Below, in pieces: positions 20,955 to 32,733 of a stretch of DNA of 64,000 nucleotides; position 1 is the stretch's first letter, and the number at the start of each line of letters is the position of its first letter. A model generated the notes under the pieces. That model saw only the letters and a program-made list of their open reading frames with translations, was not told the DNA's origin and did not search any database. The DNA is taken from positions 124,001 to 188,000 of IMG/VR virus record IMGVR_UViG_3300030419_004471, one strand, 5' to 3'. The translations under genes were made by a program, and so were the position numbers.

Positions 20955-21838
20955 TCTTCGTATTTATCAATTATAAAATCAACTCTTTGCTTTTGTGTAT
21001 GGTTATCTAATACTTTTCTATATCCATTCTCAGCTATTCTTTCTCTCTCTTTATTATCATCTGCATATTTGTTCATTTTGTTAATACAATCAACCATATC
21101 ATTATAGTAAACTATATCCTCACCATCAACAAATAGTTCATCTAATCTTTTTGATTTATTTAATCTATCAGTTAGTACCATTTTTTTACAAGCCATTCCT
21201 TCAAATATTCTACGAGTAATTTCACCCCATCTACTATGTTGAAGTACTATCATACCACTATTTAAAAATTGAGTATGTTCATCAGATTCCATTCCATTTT
21301 TATTACCAATACTTCCAGCTGAATGTGCAGTTATAGTATCTAAAAACTGAGAACCTCCCATACCTCTAGTTGTAACTGCTATAAATTGATTTTCAACTTC
21401 TTCTATTGGATATTGAACTCTTGTATCTGCAAAGTGTGTCCACCAATAAGCATTTCTTCCTCTTTTCTTATATTCTTCAGCTGATTCATAATCAGGTGAA
21501 AGAGTCATATGAAATCTTTCAGATTTTGGATAGTTGTTTTCAAAATTTTGTGGGTCATCTCCACTCTCTTGTACCCAAAATGCTGATGGTAGTTTTTCTT
21601 TATCTAATTCTGGTGAATCAAATCTACCCCAATCCATAAACAATACGATATTAGAATCATCTTCTTTACTTAACCAATCTTTAATATTATCATCAAAGTA
21701 TTGACCTGTTCTATTTGAACCTATGGAAACTATATTAACATCCCATCCTCTATCTTCAAACTCATAAGCTAATGATAATGGTGTTGACCACTTCTCACCA
21801 TCATATGCATATACAAATGTTATTTTAGATTGTTTCAT
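20936..21838 (-). CDS. GT-B glycosyltransferase (CgeB/Glyco_trans_1_2-like)
   Basis: DDP, RIFEGMAC, RERIAENG..V...HT. Confidence 0.78.
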   Translation of the reverse strand: MKQSKITFVYAYDGEKWSTPLSLAYEFEDRGWDVNIVSIGSNRTGQYFDDNIKDWLSKEDDSNIVLFMDWGRFDSPELDKEKLPSAFWVQESGDDPQNFENNYPKSERFHMTLSPDYESAEEYKKRGRNAYWWTHFADTRVQYPIEEVENQFIAVTTRGMGGSQFLDTITAHSAGSIGNKNGMESDEHTQFLNSGMIVLQHSRWGEITRRIFEGMACKKMVLTDRLNKSKRLDELFVDGEDIVYYNDMVDCINKMNKYADDNKERERIAENGYRKVLDNHTQKQRVDFIIDKYEEWKNSQ

Positions 21839-22448
21839 AAAATTCGTTTTGTTTTTCCTGTCTTTCAATTTTTTTGTGATGATATAAACAATATTCTTCT
21901 TGTGGAGGAAAGTTTGAAACAGTATCATAACCTGTAATTCTTTCGTGAACTTTATTCATCCACATTATTTCTGGTGTGTTTCTATAAACTCTAGTTTGAT
22001 AATCAGGGAAATTAACCCAACCTTTATCACTTACATTCCATCCCCATTTTTTAATATGTTCATCTGTTAATCCTTCAACAGTATTTATTCTTGGAATAAA
22101 AATAACATCAACTTCATTACCATCCAATATATCAGCTAATGAACTTGCTAAGTATTCATTTGGAATTTCATCTGCATCAATCTGAAAAATATAATCTTTG
22201 GTACAATGTGATTTTAAATTATTTTTAAATGATGCGAAATCTTTATTTAATGGAAATGCAATTACTTTGTATCCGTGCATCTTTTCCATTATTTTTAGAT
22301 ATTCCAATACTTCATCAGTAACCGATGATTCATCATACTGAACAACTACTTCATCATTTTCATTTGAGTGTAATTGTAAAAAGTTTAGAAGATTCGTTAT
22401 CTCTTCTAATTCATTACATACTGTTATTGCGTAACTAATCGTTTTCAC
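21825..22448 (-). CDS. GT2 glycosyltransferase
   Basis: ISYAITVCNE, IDADE, PDYQTR, VHE. Confidence 0.85.
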   Translation of the reverse strand: MKTISYAITVCNELEEITNLLNFLQLHSNENDEVVVQYDESSVTDEVLEYLKIMEKMHGYKVIAFPLNKDFASFKNNLKSHCTKDYIFQIDADEIPNEYLASSLADILDGNEVDVIFIPRINTVEGLTDEHIKKWGWNVSDKGWVNFPDYQTRVYRNTPEIMWMNKVHERITGYDTVSNFPPQEEYCLYHHKKIERQEKQNEFYETI

Positions 22449-22962
22449 TTCTATCTTGTTTTAATACGTCTTTAATTTCTGCTTTTGTATCTGTCTCTTC
22501 ATTAAATAATTTTACTAATGCATCATATTCAAAAACTACTTCACTAGCGTTTTGTATTTTATCTATAAAATATGTTCTATAGTTACCTAATCTATAGGAA
22601 TAGACAGCTCTATTATTTTTAATAAACCCATCAAATAATCTTTTACCTGGTGCATCAAATTTTTTCAATAAAGATGCCAAATCTTTATAATCTGGTGTTA
22701 TTGGGTTAGTTTTATCTCTTAGCTTTCTAAGCATTGATATTAAGGATGTTGGTAATACCTCATTAATTTTTATACAATGTAATTTCATCTTACCTCCATC
22801 AGAAACTCTACCAATTACAAAAACATATCTTGCATCAGGTCCTCTTTTAGTATCACCACCATAGTTAACAAGTCTGTAAATATTTCCTTGTTTTATCTGA
22901 GCTTTAGCTACTCTTCTTTCTGGTTTAAGAAACTCTAAATATTGATTTATATAATTTGGCAT
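22435..22962 (-). CDS. hypothetical phage protein (weak resemblance to T4 gp2 end protector)
   Basis: GNIYRLVNY...YRTY pattern; function tentative. Confidence 0.4.
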   Translation of the reverse strand: MPNYINQYLEFLKPERRVAKAQIKQGNIYRLVNYGGDTKRGPDARYVFVIGRVSDGGKMKLHCIKINEVLPTSLISMLRKLRDKTNPITPDYKDLASLLKKFDAPGKRLFDGFIKNNRAVYSYRLGNYRTYFIDKIQNASEVVFEYDALVKLFNEETDTKAEIKDVLKQDRSEND

Positions 22963-24224
22963 TATAACTTTTTAATTTCAGGTAATTTTAAACTTACAAA
23001 CTCTGGTAGTTTGATATATTTATCCATAATTTTTCCGAACTTCTCATGCATTGCTTTTAAAGAAAAGTTTTTCTTTGTATTATTAACTAATCCTTTTGAT
23101 TTATTTGAATAAGTTTTATAATCGTTAAATACTTTATCAATCATACCAGCCGCATAAGAGTAATTTAATTGATACCATTTTGCTTCTTTTAATAAGAACT
23201 TATCTGCAACACTTGGATGAATATTATCCAATGCTCCTTCTAAAAATACAGTGTTCTCTTCTGGTAAGAAATCTAAATGCCCACTCCATTTGGATACTAA
23301 GATAGGTTTTCCTGTTAGTGAGAATTCACATAATGGTCTCCCATATCCCTCACCTTTAGTAAAAGATATCATAGCTTTTACTTTTGGATGATGATACAAA
23401 GATGCCATTTCATCTTCATGCAAATCACCAAATAAAAGATATATTGGTGGACAGTTATCTCCGAATTGAGATTTTATTGATTTAATCTTAGCTGATATAT
23501 CTTCTCTATCAATAACTGAGAATCCAGCTGAAGATGTTTTTAATATTAATCCTGGTTGTTTATTTTTTGGAGTATTTTTAAAAACAGTACAGAATGTTTG
23601 AATCATCATACCAACATCCTTTCTATCTTTACCTAAATCTCCTTTTAACCAATGCCCAACAAAAAGATAATTCCAATCAGTTTCTATCCCTTCTAAAACA
23701 TCTTTTTCTGTTTTAGGATTTAAAAATGTTTCTAATTGAACTCCCTCATGCAAAACTTCTATAGGTGTAGTTACCTTATGTTGTTTTACAACTTTATTTG
23801 TTCTCTTATCTCTTTCATCATATATAGTATTTGCCAATGTAGCTTTAGAGAATTCTGTAGGTACTATAATCAAATCCATTCTATTACATCCATCAATCCA
23901 ATCTTTTGGTGCTAATGTTGATTCAATACCAGCCGTTATACCAATACTAAACTTAGCTCTTTTTTGGAATTCATTTGGTACTGTCATTTGAATATGAACC
24001 TCTGGTTGTTTATCTACTGGTCTTGCACAACTTTCTAATAATTTTTTACCAAAATCTGTTGTTGGATTTATTTGATTTTGTGGTGTAGTACCCCAACGAG
24101 TTGGAATAGTATGTACATCAAACTTATCATATTCAAAAATTGATTTCAAGATATCTCTTGAATGGTCACCATATCCACTTCTTGTTGCAACTGGCGCCTG
24201 ATATATTAATAATGGTTTACTCAT
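22962..24224 (-). CDS. GT4-like GT-B glycosyltransferase
   Basis: SGYG, RKD, KGEGYGRPLCE. Confidence 0.85.
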   Translation of the reverse strand: MSKPLLIYQAPVATRSGYGDHSRDILKSIFEYDKFDVHTIPTRWGTTPQNQINPTTDFGKKLLESCARPVDKQPEVHIQMTVPNEFQKRAKFSIGITAGIESTLAPKDWIDGCNRMDLIIVPTEFSKATLANTIYDERDKRTNKVVKQHKVTTPIEVLHEGVQLETFLNPKTEKDVLEGIETDWNYLFVGHWLKGDLGKDRKDVGMMIQTFCTVFKNTPKNKQPGLILKTSSAGFSVIDREDISAKIKSIKSQFGDNCPPIYLLFGDLHEDEMASLYHHPKVKAMISFTKGEGYGRPLCEFSLTGKPILVSKWSGHLDFLPEENTVFLEGALDNIHPSVADKFLLKEAKWYQLNYSYAAGMIDKVFNDYKTYSNKSKGLVNNTKKNFSLKAMHEKFGKIMDKYIKLPEFVSLKLPEIKKL

Positions 24225-24225
24225 C

Positions 24226-25617
24226 TTATTTTATTTTGTATAAATTATATCTCTTTTTAGGTTTCCAGTTCTTTATTGCTTTCTCAATACCATCTGCCAT
24301 ACATTTATTTTGGTTATCTACATTTAATCCTAAATCCCCTAAAAATGCTTCTCTTCCAGCTTTTCCAGCTTTTTTTCTACCTTCATCACCTTTATCATAC
24401 CAATATCTAATTGCTTGTGCAACTTCAGTTACATCAACTTTATCATCAATAATATAAGGTGTTGGAACTGAACCTGTCATTGTTTGTACTCTACTCCATA
24501 CGGGCTTTACCCATTCACCGTGAGTTACTTTATCTTCCCAATCTCTCCAATTATGAAGTGAACCAATTTTCTTATAATCTTCTGCAGTAAATAATTTACC
24601 ATCTGATTTCTTTCTAAATCCACATTGGTCTTGCAATCCACCAGTAATGTTTACTATAATTGGTGTTTCAGCCATTACTGATTCAGCGGTTGTTAATCCG
24701 AATCCTTCATTACCTGCTATATTGATTGTAACATCAGCTAAGTTGTATAGATAATTTAATTGTTGTGTATCTATTCTTGCTGTTGAAAATCTAACATCAT
24801 AATCAGGACAAATATTATCTTTTACTGCAAATAAATTTGTTCCATTTTGGTCGATAGGTTGTGTGTGCATCACTAAACAACACTTATCTCTATCTTCTTC
24901 AGGTAAACCATCTACAAATTGTTTGTATGCCCATATAACATCTGATGGTTGTTTTCTTTTAATATTTCTATTCATCCAAAATAAAACAAATTTATAATCT
25001 TTATCACCTAATATTTGTTTTTTGAAATCATCAGGAATATCATTTACTTCTTTAAAACTTTCAGAATTAATACCGTGTGGTACATAATCTACTTGCCAAT
25101 CTTCTAATGGTGTAATGGTTTCTGAATCTAATTTACCTAACCTACTTACTATACCATAAGTTTGTCTTGATATACATCCTAACCAATCACAACTTTCATA
25201 ATAATCTCTATTATATTTTGGGTCAGGTAAGTCATCCCATATATGATAAAATAATATTGGAATGTTTTCTCTAATCTCTGCTTCAATATCATATAACCAT
25301 CTCCAATATCTTGGGTCTGTAAAATGTAATATAGCATCTGGGTTATGTCTCATTATCAATTGCCTTAAAACATCTGGGTCTCCATACCCAGTCCAAGGAA
25401 TTATCTTTAATGATGCATCTTCAACGCCAGTTTGTTTTCTAACATCTGCACCCAAATCTATTTCTTTACCTTTATCAGGATGATTTACAGCTGCACCTAA
25501 CTGAACCCAATGGAATCTATCTAAAGTTCCCATAACAAATTCTTTAGATACTGTTGCTATACCTGATGTCATTCTTAAATCATCAGATAGTAATAGAATC
25601 TTCTTTTTTTCTGCCAT
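24226..25617 (-). CDS. GT4-like GT-B glycosyltransferase
   Basis: NRNIKRKQ, NEGFGLTTAES, TGGLQDQ. Confidence 0.85.
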   Translation of the reverse strand: MAEKKKILLLSDDLRMTSGIATVSKEFVMGTLDRFHWVQLGAAVNHPDKGKEIDLGADVRKQTGVEDASLKIIPWTGYGDPDVLRQLIMRHNPDAILHFTDPRYWRWLYDIEAEIRENIPILFYHIWDDLPDPKYNRDYYESCDWLGCISRQTYGIVSRLGKLDSETITPLEDWQVDYVPHGINSESFKEVNDIPDDFKKQILGDKDYKFVLFWMNRNIKRKQPSDVIWAYKQFVDGLPEEDRDKCCLVMHTQPIDQNGTNLFAVKDNICPDYDVRFSTARIDTQQLNYLYNLADVTINIAGNEGFGLTTAESVMAETPIIVNITGGLQDQCGFRKKSDGKLFTAEDYKKIGSLHNWRDWEDKVTHGEWVKPVWSRVQTMTGSVPTPYIIDDKVDVTEVAQAIRYWYDKGDEGRKKAGKAGREAFLGDLGLNVDNQNKCMADGIEKAIKNWKPKKRYNLYKIK

Positions 25618-25770: not shown

Positions 25771-25965
25771 TTAAAATTGCGAACCACTTACTTCTAATAA
25801 TGTGTATTCATTGATTTCTTCCCTAAAATCTTTATCTTCAACATATTTATCAACCGCTCTATTAACTAATTTTTGAAGTGTAATGTCCGAATCAAAAGAT
25901 AAACTTTTAAACTTGGAGTAAACATTTTTCAGAATCTTTACTGTTGTTAATTTTGTTTCTACCAT
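25771..25965 (-). CDS. small ribbon-helix-helix-like DNA-binding protein
   Basis: LTTVKI strand followed by two helices (TLQKLVNRAV). Confidence 0.55.
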   Translation of the reverse strand: MVETKLTTVKILKNVYSKFKSLSFDSDITLQKLVNRAVDKYVEDKDFREEINEYTLLEVSGSQF

Positions 25966-26022: not shown

Positions 26023-26880
26023 TTAATTCCAAGCCGAACACAATCCTCTTTCTTTAAACTCACACCAATCACATAATCTAGTTTTGTTTGTAAAGTAATC
26101 TATATCCCTATGCTTACCCTCATCATCAAACACAGTTTCAATGAAATTCATAAACCCATTCCAAGCCTTATTAATGGATGGTTTTCCATTAGCTGGAATG
26201 TGAGATGATATACGAGGAATAGGAAAATCATAATTCTCATTTATTTTTCTTTTAAGAATCTGAAACTCTACGTGAACTTTATTTAGAGGTAAATTATACT
26301 TCTCTGCGTAAATCTTTTTGTACAATAAAATTTGTGCGTTTTTTATTGGGTCTCGCTTTTGGTATTTATTCCAACCTCTTGTTGATGTTTTTAAGTCTAT
26401 AATAGTAATTGAGTTATCATATAAATTCCTTATAACAACATCAATAAAACCAAGAAAATTTATATTTGGTTTTACTTTAGCGTTTAAGGGTAGCTCAATA
26501 GCTTCTAACTTTTGATTCTTTTTAGAATACCATTTAGCTAATTTTGTTTTAAAAAACTTTAGTATCTGCCTACCATCCCCAAAAAACTCTTCCAATTCAA
26601 TTTGAGTACAGGGTAATCTATCACCTTGCTTTTCTTTTTCTTTCTTAAACTCTTCAACCAATTTATCTTTTAGTAATAAATCCAAGTCTATTTCCATAGC
26701 TTGTTTCTTTGTTACATTGTACATCACATCCAAAAAATGTTGGATGGTTTCGTGCATAGCCGTACCAAAGATTGTGTGAATGTTACCAGAACTTTCACCT
26801 AATTTATCAATATAGTTTAGTTTGAATTGTTGTGGACATGAACTCCACATATTATATTGTGAGAAAGACACTCTAGCCAT
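26023..26880 (-). CDS. PD-(D/E)xK RecB/Cas4-like exonuclease
   Basis: SFSQ..CP, FGTAMH, E, GFID, IIDLKT, Q..LY, CDWC...C Fe-S staple. Confidence 0.85.
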   Translation of the reverse strand: MARVSFSQYNMWSSCPQQFKLNYIDKLGESSGNIHTIFGTAMHETIQHFLDVMYNVTKKQAMEIDLDLLLKDKLVEEFKKEKEKQGDRLPCTQIELEEFFGDGRQILKFFKTKLAKWYSKKNQKLEAIELPLNAKVKPNINFLGFIDVVIRNLYDNSITIIDLKTSTRGWNKYQKRDPIKNAQILLYKKIYAEKYNLPLNKVHVEFQILKRKINENYDFPIPRISSHIPANGKPSINKAWNGFMNFIETVFDDEGKHRDIDYFTNKTRLCDWCEFKERGLCSAWN

Positions 26881-26932: not shown

Positions 26933-27736
26933 TTACCAAAAAGTTTTCTCTCTATCTGAATCAGGTTCGTATGTAGTATGATGTACCACATCTGTATTAT
27001 AATCACTAGCTGATTTTGGATAAGGTTTTGTTTCGTGTTTTAATCTTTTTACCAAATCTCTCTTCTCTTTTTTACTCTGAGGTAGAATCTGAATGTATCT
27101 ATGTTTTGGTGGTTCTTCTCTTCTCCAGAACTCTTTATAACCTTGCTTACCGATTTCTTTTCTAAGGTGTTCTAAGTTACCACTACCCCATAAATTAAAT
27201 ACACTTCTACTATGAATCCAATCATATGGGTCTTTACTTAATGAGATACCCCAATTAGGCATAAGAGCGATATCTGTTGATAATCCTTGATAAATCCAAT
27301 TGGTAGCTTGATATATTCCTCCTAAGTGTTCTTGTCCATTATCAGCATAAGATAATAAAACTTTTATATTTTTATCATTATCTTTAATCCATTTAAATGT
27401 TTTTGCCAATGCATTAGATTCTATATTTGAACCATACCCATCATCAACATATAATCTAGTCAACTCTAAGATGTTATCTTTAGATAATCCCTCACAAACA
27501 GAAGTTGCTGCTTTTGCTCCTACTGGAAATCCATATATTGCACATCCTATTAGTTTATCTTTATTACCAAATACATCTTCTTCATCTAACTTATAGTAAA
27601 TACCCAAAGCATATCTACACATAGTCCAAGCATGCGTATAATGCTTCTTTACTATAATATCCTTCGCTATGGATTTAGATATTTGTGCAACGTGCACTCT
27701 ACTAACATCACAATATTCTTTACCTTCTACTTTCAA
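26933..27736 (-). CDS. Mom-like GNAT DNA-modification protein
   Basis: HY, ILELTRL, NIES, LLSYAD...H.GGIYQATNW.YQG, KHRY. Confidence 0.8.
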   Translation of the reverse strand: MKVEGKEYCDVSRVHVAQISKSIAKDIIVKKHYTHAWTMCRYALGIYYKLDEEDVFGNKDKLIGCAIYGFPVGAKAATSVCEGLSKDNILELTRLYVDDGYGSNIESNALAKTFKWIKDNDKNIKVLLSYADNGQEHLGGIYQATNWIYQGLSTDIALMPNWGISLSKDPYDWIHSRSVFNLWGSGNLEHLRKEIGKQGYKEFWRREEPPKHRYIQILPQSKKEKRDLVKRLKHETKPYPKSASDYNTDVVHHTTYEPDSDREKTFW

Positions 27737-28466
27737 TTGGTTCTAATTTATGTATTTCTAATTCATCCGTATCATTATTCTTAGGATAAGTTTCTGATGG
27801 ATGTTTTAATGTTTTTAATATTTTCTTTCGTTCACCACCTTTACTCAGTATGTAAACGTATCTATGTTTTCTTGGTTCTTTACGAATCCAAAATGGTTTA
27901 TCAACTTTTTCTTGTATTTTCTTTGGGTCATTAGTTCCATAATATGGGAAGATAGTTCTACCATGCTGCCATTCACCATCTTCATTAAATTTAAAACTCC
28001 AACTATCATTGTATCTAAGTGAGTTACCCTGATAAATCCAATTGGTAGCTTGATAAATTGTACCAGCGTGTCCTTCTTTTGGGTCTGAATATGATATTAA
28101 TCCTTTAATTTGTGGTGCGTTTTCTCTTAACCATTTAAAACTCTGTCCTATAAACCAACTTTCTATATTCGAACCATAATCATCAAATATAAAAACTCTA
28201 ACTAACTCTAATACTTCTGTTCTATCTAATAAAGGTGATATTGATTGTCCACTTAATCTTCCGATTGGGTCTCCATAACATATTACACCTATAAGTTTTT
28301 CTGATGAATTAAAAAATTGATGTGAATCATCTTCGATATATAATCCTAATGAATAGGATACTTTTGTCCAAAGATGTGAATAATGATTTTTAACTATAAT
28401 ATCTTTAGCTACAGATTTGGAAATCTTTCTAATAGATAATTTTGATGTATCACAATATTGCTTCAT
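27720..28466 (-). CDS. Mom-like GNAT DNA-modification protein (paralog)
   Basis: NHYS, LELVR, NIES, ISYSD..GH.GTIYQATNW.YQG, KHRY. Confidence 0.8.
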   Translation of the reverse strand: MKQYCDTSKLSIRKISKSVAKDIIVKNHYSHLWTKVSYSLGLYIEDDSHQFFNSSEKLIGVICYGDPIGRLSGQSISPLLDRTEVLELVRVFIFDDYGSNIESWFIGQSFKWLRENAPQIKGLISYSDPKEGHAGTIYQATNWIYQGNSLRYNDSWSFKFNEDGEWQHGRTIFPYYGTNDPKKIQEKVDKPFWIRKEPRKHRYVYILSKGGERKKILKTLKHPSETYPKNNDTDELEIHKLEPIESRR

Positions 28467-28666
28467 AAACTTCCAGTCCAAAACTCATTTAAATGTTGCC
28501 AAGTCTTGTTGGTTATGATTTTGTTTATGTTAGCTGGTGAGACTTTATTGTTACGAGCTATGATGGTTATATTTCTATGACCCATTCTCCATAACTTTCT
28601 TATTTGTATAACCTGTTCATCCGTCAGTTTTGCTGATGGATGTGATTGGCCTCTTCTTATTGGCAT
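28463..28666 (-). CDS. small HTH protein (homing-endonuclease C-terminal-like)
   Basis: GQSHPSAKLTDEQVIQIR...IA...VS...I..I...TW. Confidence 0.7.
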   Translation of the reverse strand: MPIRRGQSHPSAKLTDEQVIQIRKLWRMGHRNITIIARNNKVSPANINKIITNKTWQHLNEFWTGSL

Positions 28667-28930
28667 TTATAAATTTTCATTAATACTATTTGTGTACGCT
28701 AGCTCTGATTGCACTCCTACAAATCTATTTATTTCAACTCCATCCTTCTCTATTACTACTGTAGGAACTGACCTAACGTGGTATTTTTGAGCTTCTTCAA
28801 ATTGTTCGTCTATATTAATATACGAAAAATTTACCGAATTTCCAAATTTTTGATTAACTTTTTCTAAAATCGGTTTTAGAGCTTTGCAAGGTCCACACCA
28901 AGGGGCTTCGAATTTTTTAACTTCTATCAT
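28667..28930 (-). CDS. trxA: thioredoxin
   Basis: WCGPC; VRSVPT. Confidence 0.92.
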   Translation of the reverse strand: MIEVKKFEAPWCGPCKALKPILEKVNQKFGNSVNFSYINIDEQFEEAQKYHVRSVPTVVIEKDGVEINRFVGVQSELAYTNSINENL

Positions 28931-28949
28931 TTTTTTCTCCTATTTAAAT

Positions 28950-30734
28950 TTAACCATCACACGCAACACAATCAGGGTCAACTGCTCTATCTGCAATATC
29001 ACCTCTGAGTACACTTTCCGTTCTCATATAATACAAAGTTTTTATACCTTGTTTCCACGCTTCCATTGTAACTTGATTAATCCACTTCGGTGTTGCAATC
29101 GAAGGGAACGCCAAATTTAATGATACGGATTGGTCAATATACTGCTGTCTAACACCAGCTTGCTTAACCAAATCCATTTGATTAATTTCTTTGAATGTTT
29201 TAAATACTTCTTTTACTGGATAAACCTTATCCCTATCTCCATTTTTAATATCTTTACATAATGTAAGTTTTCCATCTAAATAACACCATTTATCCAATTC
29301 TTTTAATGATTGAACAGAACCACCGTCATCCAATATTTTATCCCAAGTTTCCTTTTTATTTATACCAGCTTTTCTTAGTGCTTTTTCTAGCTCCCCATTC
29401 TTTCTAATAAATGTACCTTTAGAAGTTTGCTCAGTAAATACATTAGCTGCCCAAGGCTCAATACCTGGTGATACATTACCACTAAGTTTTGAATTACTAA
29501 CAGTTGGTGCAACTGCTCTTAAATGTGTATTTCTAAATCCACTTTCTCTACACCATAATGGTTCACCATATTCTTCTGCTAATTGTCTACTAGCTCTTTC
29601 TGATTCAATTTTTAATTGTGAAAATATTTTACGAGTTTCAAACTGAGCTTCCATACCTTCAAATGGAATACCTCTTTGTTGTAAGTAAGTGTGCCATCCT
29701 AAAACTCCTAATCCTAATGCTCTACCTTTTTCAGCAGATGCTACTGAATTTTCAAATCCTCTCATATTTTTAGCTTTCTGAATAAATTCTGAAAGTACTC
29801 CATCTAAAAATATAGTTGCAGTATGAACTAAATCAGTATCTCTCCACTCATCATACTTTGCTAAGTTAAGTGAAGATAAACAACATACAAATGAATGATT
29901 CTCATCAGTATGTAAAGTGATTTCTGAACAGATATTAGTCATAAATACTTTTAATCCATTCTTTTTGTACATATCAGGATTACCTTTGTTTACATTACCT
30001 TTAAACATAATGTAAGGTTCACCTGTTGCTTTTCTTTTTTGTAATAATTTACCCCATTTTCTTCTTGCATCTTCATTACCATCTTGAAGTTTTCTCATAA
30101 ATTTATCACCAACGATTGCACATTGATGTAAATTAAGTGATTGTCTGTTTACATCACCTTTAGGTTCTCTTATCTCTAACCAATCTTCAAAATCATCGTG
30201 TTCAATGTTTAAGTTAACTGAAGCAGCTCCTCTTCTTACTGAACCTTGATTCGTAGCAAGAATTGTAGAATCATATATTTTTGCGAAAGGTACAACACCA
30301 TCTGATGTACCATTCATAGTAATTATAGAACCTGCTGGTCTAATTTGGTTAATACATATACCAACACCACCACCATGCTTTGCTAATAGCATTAATTCTA
30401 AATTCTTTTTTCCAATCTCATAGATACTATCACCCACATCTATACCAAAGCAACTTATTGGTAATCCTCTATCTGTTCCAGTATTTGAAAGAACTGGTGT
30501 TGCTAAATTTAACCAACCTTTCCAGATGTAATCAAAGAACTTTGTTGCCATCTGAGGTTTGTTTAATCTTTGTGCAATACGAGTAGCTACTCTCCAATAT
30601 GCATCTTTGGGTTTTTCACCAGGTAAAAGATACCCTTTTGAAATTGTTTTAACATATATTTCTGTATTTGCCCAAGATGGAAAATCTACATCAATTTCCC
30701 ATTCAAACTCTTCACCATAATTTTTTGCTGCCAT
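28950..30734 (-). CDS. nrdA: class Ia ribonucleotide reductase alpha subunit (no ATP cone)
   Basis: ISCF, TNICSE, APT, TLYY, C-terminal CVAC. Confidence 0.95.
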   Translation of the reverse strand: MAAKNYGEEFEWEIDVDFPSWANTEIYVKTISKGYLLPGEKPKDAYWRVATRIAQRLNKPQMATKFFDYIWKGWLNLATPVLSNTGTDRGLPISCFGIDVGDSIYEIGKKNLELMLLAKHGGGVGICINQIRPAGSIITMNGTSDGVVPFAKIYDSTILATNQGSVRRGAASVNLNIEHDDFEDWLEIREPKGDVNRQSLNLHQCAIVGDKFMRKLQDGNEDARRKWGKLLQKRKATGEPYIMFKGNVNKGNPDMYKKNGLKVFMTNICSEITLHTDENHSFVCCLSSLNLAKYDEWRDTDLVHTATIFLDGVLSEFIQKAKNMRGFENSVASAEKGRALGLGVLGWHTYLQQRGIPFEGMEAQFETRKIFSQLKIESERASRQLAEEYGEPLWCRESGFRNTHLRAVAPTVSNSKLSGNVSPGIEPWAANVFTEQTSKGTFIRKNGELEKALRKAGINKKETWDKILDDGGSVQSLKELDKWCYLDGKLTLCKDIKNGDRDKVYPVKEVFKTFKEINQMDLVKQAGVRQQYIDQSVSLNLAFPSIATPKWINQVTMEAWKQGIKTLYYMRTESVLRGDIADRAVDPDCVACDG

Positions 30735-30735
30735 T

Positions 30736-31155
30736 TTATAATAATTTTATTTGTGATGAATCACCATAATTTCCAAATAATTCATCGTCTTTTTTAATAT
30801 CTCTTAATGCTATTCCTGTATTGCTATCTATATTACCTTTTTCATACATAGTGTTTATCATAGCCAATGGTTCTGAAAATAAAAAATTAGTATCCTTTAT
30901 CAATCTAAAACTGATATATGAATAATCATCATTTATTCTACTCCCATATGAACGTAACAAATATGCTAAAACTTCTTTAGGTAACTCCTTAGCTTCTTTA
31001 AATCTTATTCTATACCATTTAGTTTTTCCTTCCCAATTTGGAAAAACCTGCTCTCCTTTCTTAATATCTACCAAAGCAAACAAACCAACACCGTGCACTT
31101 TGCTTGGTCTTTGATATGATTTTACACTCGTATTAAGATAATCAAATGGTTTCAT
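30736..31155 (-). CDS. SET-domain protein (lysine methyltransferase-like)
   Basis: SKVHGVGLFALVDIKKGE; ALRDIKKDDELFGNYG; NH motif appears as MINT. Confidence 0.78.
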   Translation of the reverse strand: MKPFDYLNTSVKSYQRPSKVHGVGLFALVDIKKGEQVFPNWEGKTKWYRIRFKEAKELPKEVLAYLLRSYGSRINDDYSYISFRLIKDTNFLFSEPLAMINTMYEKGNIDSNTGIALRDIKKDDELFGNYGDSSQIKLL

Positions 31156-31732
31156 ACTTTTTTCTTTTTTGAAAATCCCCATCGATAAAATAAGTCCAGT
31201 TACAATTGTGTCCATCTTCAATTATTTTAGGATAATTCTCCCTGTGTGGAGAATTAATCTTAAACCAGTGAGAATGTAAATCTTTTGTATCTCTTATAGA
31301 AAAATAACTAAAAATTGATAAAACACAATTTTCATTTGCAACCATCTTTGCATAATCCTCAAACTTATTATAGTTTGAATCATCATAAGTATCCATAAAG
31401 ATACCATCAAATTTGATATCCAGCTCTGGTATTACATCTATCCAATCTCCAAAATGTATATGAACATTCTCTTTACCCTCAGCCCACTCTAGAGCTTTTG
31501 AATAAATTTGTGGATTTGATTCGATACAATGATAGTTGCCAACTCTTTTATAAATGGCATCTGCACTATATCCAAGTCCAAATCCTACATCTAATACTTT
31601 ACCACCATTTTGTGTAACTATATTAGAATAAAATTCCATCAATTCTTTAGATACAATATCCATAACAATTGATGAATGGTCATCAGAATAATATATTCTG
31701 CTATCTGTTATTGTAACCTTTTTATTTTTCAA
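31142..31732 (-). CDS. class I SAM methyltransferase, GAMT/Rmt2-like
   Basis: VM, GGKVLDVGFGLG, IESNP, GDWIDV, FDGIFMDTY; TTG start. Confidence 0.8.
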   Translation of the reverse strand: MKNKKVTITDSRIYYSDDHSSIVMDIVSKELMEFYSNIVTQNGGKVLDVGFGLGYSADAIYKRVGNYHCIESNPQIYSKALEWAEGKENVHIHFGDWIDVIPELDIKFDGIFMDTYDDSNYNKFEDYAKMVANENCVLSIFSYFSIRDTKDLHSHWFKINSPHRENYPKIIEDGHNCNWTYFIDGDFQKRKKYETI

Positions 31733-31737
31733 TTTTT

Positions 31738-32733
31738 TTAAAATAAATCATCCCAATCTTCTCCCTCATTAGCTTTACTATAATCAGTAGGTCTAATAGC
31801 GAAAAAATCGGTATGAGTGTGTCCACCTGTCAAATGATAAAACCAATCTAAATTATCAGCTTTCTTCTTATCGAATTCAAAGATACCTTTGTATCCTAGT
31901 TCTTCTAATTTAGTATTGGTTCGTTGTTTAATAAACTCTTTTAAATCATCTGCTTTTAAATTTTCCAAATCACCCATCTCAAACATTTTATCAATAAATT
32001 TAAGTTCGAGTTCAACGATTAATTTAGCGGCTTCAGTAATACTCTTTTTACATTGTTTTAATAAGTCTGGATATTCATCACACATATGTCTGAATAATAC
32101 ACATCCCATTTTAGAATGTAAAGATTCATCTCGTACTGACCATTTCATTTGCTGACCAATACCTTTGAGTTTATTTCTCATTTGAAATGAATATAGAACA
32201 GCGAATGAAGAATACAAAGAAACTCCTTCAGCAAATGCAGAAAAGATAGCTAAACTTCTACCTACTTCTTGTCTTGCTTTTTCATTTTTTTGTAAATCTT
32301 CATGTGTCCAATCTGCAGAGGTTTCTGTGAGTAATTCAAATTTTTCCGCTACTGCTGGTTCGTGTAGAAAAGCTTCGAAGTTTTCCAATCCTAATGTTTC
32401 ATTTAGATATGAATATGCAGTTGCATGAATGGTTTCTTGTGAACCAAACATCATTGCCATTTGTCTTATCTCATGCTTAGGAAACCATTTAGTAACCATA
32501 TTAGTCCAATAATCTGAAACTGCACATTCTGTTTGTGCAAATCCCAATAGAATATTACCAACTAAGTTTTTTTCTTCCTTAGTTAAGGTTTCATTCCAAT
32601 CCTTGACATCCATTTGCATGGGTATCTCGGTGTGAAGCCAAAATGCTTGTGCTTGTTTTAACCAGCCTTCATTATAATATATTGGATATTCGAATGGTTT
32701 GAACGGAATTCGTTCTTTGAATAGTTTACTCAT
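31738..32733 (-). CDS. nrdB: class Ia ribonucleotide reductase beta subunit
   Basis: ETIHATAY, AEGVSLYSSF, RDESLH, DFF...DY. Confidence 0.95.
   Translation of the reverse strand: MSKLFKERIPFKPFEYPIYYNEGWLKQAQAFWLHTEIPMQMDVKDWNETLTKEEKNLVGNILLGFAQTECAVSDYWTNMVTKWFPKHEIRQMAMMFGSQETIHATAYSYLNETLGLENFEAFLHEPAVAEKFELLTETSADWTHEDLQKNEKARQEVGRSLAIFSAFAEGVSLYSSFAVLYSFQMRNKLKGIGQQMKWSVRDESLHSKMGCVLFRHMCDEYPDLLKQCKKSITEAAKLIVELELKFIDKMFEMGDLENLKADDLKEFIKQRTNTKLEELGYKGIFEFDKKKADNLDWFYHLTGGHTHTDFFAIRPTDYSKANEGEDWDDLF

What the first reader, a model, noticed from the sequence alone, without database searches (positions are those of the whole stretch)
26933..28666. Tandem Mom-like GNAT paralogs preceded by an HTH gene
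Seen: two overlapping paralogs sharing HY/LELxR/NIES/SYxD/IYQATNW/KHRY, directly downstream of nrdA-trx-HTH. Known: Mu Mom is a GNAT-fold enzyme that makes N6-carbamoylmethyl adenine to block restriction. Inference: a heterodimer or two sequence specificities giving heavy adenine hypermodification.
Basis: partly seen in the sequence, partly recalled or inferred. Interest (0 to 1): 0.6.

Follow-up and report, generated by a model that had tools for sequence, protein, structure and literature searches.

The report
Tandem Mom DNA-modification genes, jumbo phage
An uncultured marine jumbo phage carries two old, both intact copies of the Mom enzyme (which in phage Mu puts a glycine-derived group on adenine in DNA to block restriction) behind a small DNA-binding-type gene. 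This array is conserved in dozens of related aquatic phages and most likely gives two adenine-modifying activities rather than one heterodimer.

Summary
Window 26933-28666 (minus strand) encodes three coupled genes: a 67-aa HTH-like protein, MomA (248 aa) and MomB (267 aa).

**Family.** Both Moms match Pfam Mom PF25680 end to end (E about 1e-45) and are 41% identical to each other. Both keep H58, Y59, R111, S124, D149, Y159 and W181 (Mu numbering). dN/dS is about 0.1 for each.

**Origin.** They are not a recent duplication. MomA and MomB are separate, well-supported clades, and MomB's nearest kin are single-copy Moms.

**Spread.** The module recurs as 65 distinct A+B sequence pairs in IMG/VR contigs. 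A few have three tandem copies. No cultured phage record (0 of 324) has two copies.

**Heterodimer.** An obligate heterodimer is disfavoured:
- relatives exist with HTH-MomB only;
- other genes lie between A and B in many relatives;
- B alleles are exchanged independently of A.

**Two specificities.** Columns fixed differently in the two clades are enriched in the HTH-like insertion that Mu Mom is thought to use on DNA (odds ratio 6.3, p = 4e-4). That fits two DNA-context specificities. Fixed differences beside the catalytic Ser leave different donors open.

The chemistry (Gly-tRNA to N6-glycyl-dA to ncm6A) is inferred from Mu only. I rate this a new variant of a known kind, of moderate interest.

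The parts
28463..28666 (-). 67-aa HTH-like gene, first gene of the module. It is single-copy in the genome and has no cysteines, so it is not a Com-type zinc finger.
   Evidence: ORF. No Pfam or NCBIfam hit. Weak PHROG and PADLOC hits to the DNA-binding part of HNH/homing endonucleases (E 1.7e-4 and 0.02). AF2 model pLDDT 76 with four predicted helices. Middling fold matches led by DNA-binding HTH domains. Atlas HTH_7-like viral clusters score 0.92. Lies directly upstream of the first Mom in nearly all A/B-lineage loci. Only one copy in the 213.6-kb genome.
27720..28466 (-). MomA, 248 aa, Mom-family GNAT. ATG at 28466, stop at 27720-27722.
   Evidence: PF25680 156.9 bits, phrog_1384 E 2.7e-53. 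Matches PDB 8bv8 (Mu Mom) by sequence, E 2.2e-13. Start fixed by comparison with relatives. H58, Y59, R111, S124, D149, Y159 and W181 are invariant in 73 distinct orthologs. dN/dS 0.09.
26933..27736 (-). MomB, 267 aa, Mom-family GNAT. TTG start at 27736, stop at 26933-26935.
   Evidence: PF25680 155.8 bits. AF2 model pLDDT 90.3; best PDB match is 8bv8 (Mu Mom), E 4e-15, TM 0.70-0.73. H58, Y59, R111, S124 and Y159 are invariant in 71 distinct orthologs; D149 is D in the window copy and N in 12 of 71. dN/dS 0.11. TTG/ATG start comparison.
28463..28466 (-). ATGA stop/start overlap between the HTH gene and MomA (translational coupling).
   Evidence: Sequence read. A second group of relatives has TAATG here instead.
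27720..27736 (-). 17-nt overlap of the MomA 3' end with the MomB 5' end. The MomB TTG lies inside the MomA codons Pro-Ile-Glu.
   Evidence: The TTG is kept in all 72 overlapping loci.
28667..30734 (-). Conserved upstream context: nrdA (28950-30734) and thioredoxin (28667-28930). There is no gap between the thioredoxin stop and the HTH start.

Best explanation
The locus is a three-gene module (HTH-like gene, MomA, MomB). It sits in the nucleotide-metabolism and replication gene block of an uncultured marine phage of about 214 kb, probably one infecting Bacteroidota.

MomA and MomB are two anciently separated, separately translated and catalytically intact members of the Mom family. By homology with Mu Mom, each takes glycine from host Gly-tRNA(Gly) and acylates N6 of adenine in double-stranded phage DNA after replication. 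The adduct then rearranges to N6-carbamoylmethyl-adenine, which blocks host restriction enzymes.

I think the two enzymes work independently and recognise different DNA contexts. Together they would mark more adenines than one enzyme could in a 31% G+C genome. The small HTH protein is a lineage-specific companion, either a DNA-binding regulator or an accessory factor.

Shown here: family membership, intact catalytic residues, purifying selection on both copies, conservation of the array, and the genetic independence of the two copies. Inferred: the chemistry, the target base, the difference in specificity and the role of the HTH protein.
For: Family: PF25680 full-length hits for both copies; sequence match to PDB 8bv8; the MomB model matches 8bv8 best. 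Residues needed in Mu (PMC13219725), namely H58, Y59, R111, S124, D149, Y159 and W181, are kept in both clades.

Both copies are under purifying selection: median dN/dS 0.09 and 0.11.

Old, distinct subfamilies: A clade 99/99, B clade 100/100. B is sister to single-copy Moms at 98/96.

Conservation: nrdA-trx-HTH-MomA-MomB occurs in every locus long enough to show it among the first 37 loci and in most of 79 further loci. There are 65 distinct A+B sequence pairs.

Independence:
- HTH-MomB-only relatives, on contigs up to 100 kb that hold a single Mom.
- One to two small ORFs, or a 2.4-kb insert with a methyltransferase-like ORF, between A and B in many relatives.
- MomB then starts with its own ATG.
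- L028 and L188 have window-like A copies but divergent B copies.
- dS between the window and L001 is 0.27 for A and 0.67 for B.

Specificity: columns fixed differently in the two clades are enriched in the stretch aligned to Mu 169-213, the HTH-like insertion proposed to sit in the DNA major groove. The odds ratio is 6.3 (p = 4e-4). A-B identity is 28% there against 47% elsewhere, and MomB carries two small indels there.

Rationale: only 8.8% of this genome's adenines lie in the Mu motif context SAS. The genome has no PF01555, PF02086 or PF00145 DNA methyltransferase.

Presence: contigs about 93% identical, lying inside both genes, occur in a marine metatranscriptome library.
Against: No modified base has been measured for this phage or for any member of either clade.

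Mu's essential R151 is Lys in MomA and Gly in MomB. This position is variable across the family, and a His three residues on is conserved instead.

Fixed A/B differences also lie next to the catalytic residues (Mu 60, 87, 126, 148, 157). The paralogs could therefore differ in donor or chemistry rather than in DNA context.

The tight overlap of the genes in the window fits a protein complex as well as it fits ordinary phage gene packing. DNA carry-over in the RNA library is not excluded.

No MomA-only relative was seen, so it is not shown that MomA can act alone.
Confidence: 0.5

Rival explanations
1. Different chemistry. MomA and MomB use different aminoacyl-tRNA donors, or modify different acceptor atoms or bases, so the virion DNA carries two chemically different adducts.
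For: Fixed clade-specific substitutions sit beside catalytic residues. The residue two after S124 is Phe in A and Ala in B. Mu-87 is Asp in A and Phe in B. Mu-151 is Lys in A and Gly in B. Mu-157 is Thr in A and Gly in B. The two clades are old and separate. [quoted passage not shown]
Against: All residues shown to matter in Mu are shared. The strongest concentration of divergence is in the DNA-side insertion, not the core. Metagenomic Mom homologs tested by Silva et al. are described as active in their assay. There is no direct evidence for any donor other than Gly-tRNA in this family.
Confidence: 0.2
2. Obligate heterodimer. MomA and MomB form one enzyme, as a heteromeric version of the Mu Mom homodimer, and neither works alone.
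For: Mu Mom is a tight homodimer, and the monomeric W48A mutant is nearly inactive. In the window the genes overlap by 17 nt and are translationally coupled. A and B co-occur in 65 distinct pairs, and no MomA-only relative was found.
Against: HTH-MomB-only relatives exist (L076, L085, L109-L112, L119). Five of their contigs, up to 100 kb, were searched and hold a single Mom. In many relatives the genes are 0.2-2.4 kb apart with other genes between. A and B tree positions disagree for L028 and L188. The Mu interface residue W48 is Ser in both and the segment holding Y28 is absent. Both copies keep a full catalytic set, which does not fit a catalytic-plus-scaffold pair.
Confidence: 0.12
3. Redundancy or back-up. 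Both enzymes make the same mark at the same sites. The second copy serves dosage, timing, or escape from a host factor that inhibits one Mom type.
For: Both are intact and under similar constraint. Copy number varies from one to three among relatives, as expected for a dispensable and exchangeable function.
Against: Only 41% identity, and clade-specific fixed differences are conserved across 70+ orthologs of each clade. Pure redundancy would not usually keep two such distinct forms across a whole phage lineage.
Confidence: 0.1
4. One paralog no longer acts on phage DNA. It might acylate RNA/tRNA or host DNA, or act as a regulator.
For: GNATs that act on tRNA are structural neighbours of Mom: AtaT appears among the fold hits, and the paper compares Mom with TacT and FemX. 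MomB lacks the Mu R151 equivalent, and a subclade has D149N.
Against: The D149N form occurs as the only Mom in some relatives. The HTH-like insertion needed for Mu activity on DNA is present in both copies.
Confidence: 0.05

Closest known systems
Phage Mu Mom (PDB 8bv8; PMC13219725)
   Same: Same Pfam family. GNAT core plus an HTH-like insertion. H58, Y59, R111, S124, D149, Y159 and W181 are conserved. Phage-encoded. A small upstream gene overlaps the mom start.
   Different: Only 21-28% identity. Two tandem copies instead of one. Mu R151 is replaced by Lys (A) or Gly (B). The Mu dimer residue W48 is replaced by Ser, and about 16 residues around Y28 are missing. The upstream gene is an HTH-like protein without cysteines, not the Com zinc finger. 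The genes sit among nucleotide-metabolism genes, not at the end of a late operon.
Polaribacter phage P12002L Mom-like protein (NC_028924, gp53)
   Same: Closest cultured-phage relative (about 47% identity to MomA and 43% to MomB). Marine, with a Flavobacteriia host.
   Different: Single copy, in a 48.7-kb genome, next to a DNA methyltransferase, with no HTH gene upstream. It forms its own clade in the tree.
Mom domains of cultured jumbo phages (Iyer et al. 2021, PMC7824862)
   Same: Mom-family enzymes in phages with genomes above 200 kb.
   Different: Those are described as typically fused to a restriction-endonuclease-fold domain. Here the Moms are stand-alone and tandem. A PD-(D/E)XK/Cas4-like exonuclease is a separate downstream gene, and only in the nearest relatives.
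Phages with several orphan or multispecific DNA methyltransferases (my own knowledge, e.g. Bacillus SPbeta-group multispecific C5 methyltransferases)
   Same: Functional analogy: several modification specificities in one phage genome, to cover many host restriction systems.
   Different: Unrelated enzymes and chemistry. The analogy has not been tested here.

Membership tests
Mom family (Pfam PF25680 / phrog_1384) | Full-length match to the family profile above the curated cut-off | tested here: met
   MomB 155.8 bits and MomA 156.9 bits against a cut-off of 27.1, covering profile positions 2-202 of 202. phrog_1384 E 9e-46 and 2.7e-53.
Mom family (Pfam PF25680 / phrog_1384) | GNAT fold with the Mom-specific HTH-like insertion (Mu 175-209) | tested here: met
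   MomB model pLDDT 90.3, with two helices (175-182 and 187-196) at the insertion. Best PDB match is 8bv8, E 4e-15, TM 0.70-0.73; ordinary GNATs follow at E above 7e-5. MomA was judged by alignment only and was not folded.
Mom family (Pfam PF25680 / phrog_1384) | Catalytic residues essential in Mu: R111, S124, D149 | tested here: met
   Present in both window proteins. R111 and S124 are invariant in 73 MomA and 71 MomB orthologs. D149 is invariant in A; in B it is D in 59 and N in 12 of 71.
Mom family (Pfam PF25680 / phrog_1384) | R151, essential in Mu | tested here: not met
   Lys in MomA and Gly in MomB. The position also varies in cultured-phage Moms (R, T, E, S, M), and a His at Mu-154 is conserved instead, so it does not define the family.
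Mom family (Pfam PF25680 / phrog_1384) | Supporting residues H58, Y59, Y159, W181 | tested here: met
   Conserved in both window proteins and nearly all orthologs.
Mu-type Mom homodimer | Dimer interface residue W48 (W48A is monomeric and nearly inactive) | tested here: not met
   Ser in both paralogs, and the segment with Y28 is absent. The oligomeric state here is unknown.
Mom enzymes (biochemical definition) | Gly-tRNA(Gly)-dependent formation of N6-carbamoylmethyl-dA in dsDNA | not testable with these tools
   Known for Mu only (PMC13219725). Needs expression plus LC-MS.
Mu com-mom regulatory unit | Upstream Com zinc-finger translational activator | tested here: not met
   The upstream 67-aa protein has no cysteine and is predicted to be a helical, HTH-like domain. 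Only the gene position and the overlap resemble com.

The most novel reading that the evidence does not exclude
The arrays of two to three divergent Mom paralogs are a combinatorial DNA-hypermodification system. Each paralog would use a different aminoacyl-tRNA donor, or target a different base or context, so these abundant aquatic jumbo phages carry several distinct amino-acid-derived adducts on their DNA. The conserved HTH protein would direct or time the reaction.
Probability: 0.15. Interest if true: 0.8.

Novelty: new variant of a known kind. Interest (0 to 1): 0.5.

Why it matters
The mechanism of Mom was worked out only in 2023-2026, and for a single enzyme from Mu. What sets its DNA-context and donor specificity is unknown.

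This lineage offers natural pairs and triplets of intact, clearly distinct Mom enzymes in one genome, with dozens of orthologs of each. It also offers natural 'knock-outs' (MomB-only relatives) and allele swaps. That is a ready comparative system for mapping specificity determinants.

The phages are widespread. Near-identical sequence occurs in runs from more than ten seawater, marine, freshwater and cold-seep studies. Their DNA may therefore be heavily adenine-modified, which bears on restriction evasion in Bacteroidota hosts and on how well such phages are recovered by sequencing.

Tried and rejected
**Heterodimer prediction (complex prediction, MomA + MomB).** No verdict: score 0.14 against a mark of 0.32, and controls were not run. 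I count it neither for nor against binding.

**Frameshift fusion of MomA and MomB.** Rejected. MomB has its own ATG at the same codon wherever the genes are separated or only one Mom ORF is seen.

**The long TTG-started MomA ORF (28481).** Rejected. Relatives have an in-frame stop there.

**MomB inactive because R151 is Gly.** Rejected as an argument, because the position is not conserved in the family.

**Recent local duplication.** Rejected by the tree.

**HTH as a Com analogue.** No zinc-finger features. Only the gene position is similar.

**HTH as a degraded homing endonuclease.** Weak hits only. It is conserved, single-copy and coupled to Mom, so it is more likely functional.

**A phage tRNA-Gly to feed Mom.** None found; the tRNAs are Glu, Ala and Cys.

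**NCBIfam and PADLOC scans of the Moms.** Nothing useful.

**Literature.** Four searches and readings found no report of tandem Mom arrays. This is absence in the held library only.

**Not used.** I did not run the costly all-protein profile search (search of protein representatives), because the family scans settled the identity.

Full report
**What is there.** All genes in this part of the window run on the minus strand. From upstream to downstream they are:
- nrdB (31738-32733)
- a methyltransferase-like ORF and a SET-domain ORF
- nrdA (28950-30734)
- thioredoxin (28667-28930)
- a 67-aa ORF (28463-28666)
- MomA (27720-28466)
- MomB (26933-27736)
- a PD-(D/E)XK exonuclease (26023-26880)

Both match Pfam PF25680 'Mom' over the whole model (about 156 bits against a cut-off of 27.1) and phrog_1384. 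MomA matches the Mu Mom crystal structure 8bv8 by sequence (E 2e-13). An AlphaFold model of MomB (pLDDT 90.3) has 8bv8 as by far its best PDB match (E 4e-15, TM 0.70-0.73).

**Gene boundaries.** Comparison with related contigs corrects the MomA start. The TTG at 28481 is preceded or interrupted by a stop in close relatives, and the conserved start is the ATG at 28466, which overlaps the stop of the 67-aa gene as ATGA. A second group of relatives has TAATG here. MomB starts at a TTG embedded in the last codons of MomA, giving a 17-nt overlap. That TTG is kept in all 72 overlapping loci. It is an ATG at the same codon in 43 loci where the genes are separated and in 13 where only one Mom ORF is seen in the locus. 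MomB is therefore a separate protein, not a frameshift fusion.

**Where the window comes from.** The window is bases 124001-188000 of a 213.6-kb IMG/VR virus record that CheckV rates complete. It has 31% G+C and encodes tRNA-Glu, tRNA-Ala and tRNA-Cys but no tRNA-Gly. Its NrdA is closest to Flavobacterium and Cellulophaga phages (59% and 48%). The closest cultured Mom is from Polaribacter phage P12002L. A Bacteroidota host is likely. Near-identical sequence occurs in 18 public runs from more than ten studies, mostly seawater. Contigs from two independent runs cross the A/B junction with no differences. No PF01555, PF02086 or PF00145 DNA methyltransferase was found in the genome.

**What is known about Mom.** Silva et al. 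2026 (PMC13219725) showed the following for Mu Mom:
- It transfers glycine from Gly-tRNA(Gly) to N6 of adenine in dsDNA, in the context SAS.
- The adduct rearranges to N6-carbamoylmethyl-dA.
- The enzyme is a tight homodimer, and W48A is monomeric and nearly inactive.
- R111, S124, D149 and R151 are essential; H58, Y59, Y159 and W181 are important.
- An HTH-like insertion (about residues 175-209) is required and is modelled in the DNA major groove.

**Are both copies intact?** In 73 distinct MomA and 71 distinct MomB sequences, H58, Y59, R111, S124 and Y159 are invariant. W181 is invariant in MomA and nearly so in MomB. D149 is invariant in MomA. In MomB it is Asp in the window and in most orthologs, and Asn in one subclade that includes copies standing as the only Mom. 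R151 is Lys in MomA and Gly in MomB. That position varies across the family, including in cultured-phage Moms, whereas a His at Mu-154 is conserved. I therefore do not read it as loss of function. Median dN/dS is 0.09 for MomA and 0.11 for MomB. A marine metatranscriptome library holds contigs about 93% identical inside both genes, though DNA carry-over cannot be excluded.

**Evolution of the pair.** Three scans of IMG/VR gave 240 loci. A tree of 48 representatives gives a MomA clade (99/99) that is always first in the array, and a MomB clade (100/100). The sister of MomB is a clade of single-copy Moms (98/96). The Polaribacter-phage clade and a 'middle copy' clade are separate, and the backbone between clades is unresolved. 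The two genes are therefore old, distinct subfamilies brought or kept together, not a recent duplication.

The module nrdA-trx-HTH-MomA-MomB recurs in every locus long enough to show it among the first 37 loci and in most of 79 further loci. There are 65 distinct A+B sequence pairs. Three distinct arrays have a third Mom between A and B, and one has a distant third copy 3.3 kb downstream. By contrast, none of the 324 cultured-phage records that match MomA has two matching places. Among 80 loci nearest to Mu-type and other cultured-phage Moms, 78 have one copy and 2 have two non-adjacent copies.

**Heterodimer or two enzymes?** Four points argue against an obligate heterodimer.
- Relatives L076, L085, L109-L112 and L119 have the HTH gene followed directly by MomB with no MomA. 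The five of their contigs that I searched (6-53% complete, up to 100 kb) hold a single Mom.
- In many relatives A and B are 0.2-2.4 kb apart. One to two small ORFs lie between them, and in L103 a 415-aa ORF plus an N6/N4-methyltransferase-like ORF.
- The trees disagree. L028 and L188 have window-like MomA copies but MomB copies from a different, well-supported subclade. Between the window and L001, dS is 0.27 for MomA and 0.67 for MomB.
- The Mu dimer residue W48 is Ser in both, and the segment holding Y28 is missing.

The complex prediction gave no verdict, and I do not use it.

**Where the paralogs differ.** I compared columns that are at least 90% conserved within each clade. Sixty-two are shared, and they concentrate in the GNAT core. 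Columns fixed differently, or fixed in only one clade, are enriched in the stretch aligned to Mu 169-213. There, 16 of 22 conserved columns are clade-specific, against 21 of 71 elsewhere (odds ratio 6.3, p = 4e-4). A-B identity is 28% there against 47% elsewhere, and MomB has two small indels there. This is the element that Mu Mom is thought to place in the major groove, so different DNA-context specificities are the most economical reading. A second specificity would also be useful here, because only 8.8% of this genome's adenines lie in Mu's SAS context.

Fixed differences also lie beside catalytic residues: Mu-60 S/T, Mu-87 D/F, Mu-126 F/A, Mu-148 S/A and Mu-157 T/G. A difference in donor or chemistry therefore cannot be excluded.

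**The 67-aa gene.**
- It has no Pfam or NCBIfam match.
- It has weak matches to the DNA-binding part of HNH and homing endonucleases.
- A word-based search found only close orthologs (73).
- A model (pLDDT 76) has four predicted helices.
- Its middling fold matches are led by DNA-binding HTH domains: Tc3, CENP-B, IstA, Hin and resolvase, with GcrA lower in the list.
- Language-model look-alikes are viral HTH_7-type clusters.
- It has no cysteine, so it is not a Com-type zinc finger.
- It is single-copy in the genome.
- It lies directly upstream of the first Mom (A, or B where A is absent) in nearly all loci of this lineage. The exceptions are L114 and L118. It is absent from the other Mom clades.

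Its role is unknown. I guess a DNA-binding regulator or accessory factor.

**Verdict.** The locus contains two genuine, intact Mom-family enzymes in a conserved array with a lineage-specific HTH partner. The array is widespread in uncultured aquatic jumbo phages and, in the literature I could search, is not described. My ranking of readings is:
- two independent adenine-modifying activities with different DNA contexts, about 0.5;
- different chemistry, about 0.2;
- obligate heterodimer, about 0.12;
- redundancy or back-up, about 0.1;
- one copy no longer acting on phage DNA, about 0.05.

None of the chemistry has been measured for this lineage.

Noticed in passing
L147-L150 and L165 (e.g. L147:3953-6210): Related viral contigs carry three tandem Mom ORFs: MomA, a shorter 237-239-aa 'middle' copy on a long branch with catalytic residues intact, and MomB. 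L146 has a different pair (274 + 232 aa). L187 and L190 have A and B plus a very divergent third Mom 3.3 kb downstream.
   Followed up: partly
L103:1585-3751: Between MomA and MomB this relative has a 2.4-kb insert. It encodes a 415-aa ORF and a roughly 305-aa ORF with DPFxG and PPY motifs typical of N6/N4 DNA methyltransferases. The Mom array may be a hot spot for DNA-modification genes.
   Followed up: no
window 30736-31732 (-): A SET-domain ORF (PF00856, E 9e-6) and a SAM-methyltransferase-like ORF overlap each other between nrdB and nrdA. A SET-domain protein is unusual in a phage.
   Followed up: no
window 21825-25617 (-): A cluster of glycosyltransferase-like genes lies downstream of the module. 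It comprises a GT2 (207 aa), a 420-aa ORF with no Pfam hit, and a 463-aa GT4 that also scores 25.9 bits (cut-off 26) on PF20706 'GT4 in conflict systems'. The target (DNA, virion or host surface) is unknown.
   Followed up: no
window 26023-26880 (-) and 25771-25965 (-): A PD-(D/E)XK/Cas4-like exonuclease with a C-terminal Cys cluster, followed by a small Arc/RHH-like ORF, lies directly downstream of MomB. They are neighbours of the Moms only in the closest relatives (L001-L006), not in the wider lineage.
   Followed up: partly
MomB orthologs in L057, L062, L069-L071, L076, L085, L087, L088, L100, L109: A MomB subclade has Asn in place of the catalytic Asp (Mu D149), including copies that are the only Mom in their contig. 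This suggests Asn is tolerated or that the activity is altered.
   Followed up: partly
L057, L062-L064, L069: In these relatives the NrdA upstream of the module is only 38-39% identical to the window's, against 78-92% elsewhere, while HTH, MomA and MomB remain 69-81% identical. The nrdA gene has been replaced, so the region is mosaic.
   Followed up: no
G000:C1 77143-93366 (outside the window): The phage encodes tRNA-Glu(TTC), tRNA-Ala(TGC) and tRNA-Cys(GCA) but no tRNA-Gly, the donor tRNA used by Mu Mom.
   Followed up: yes
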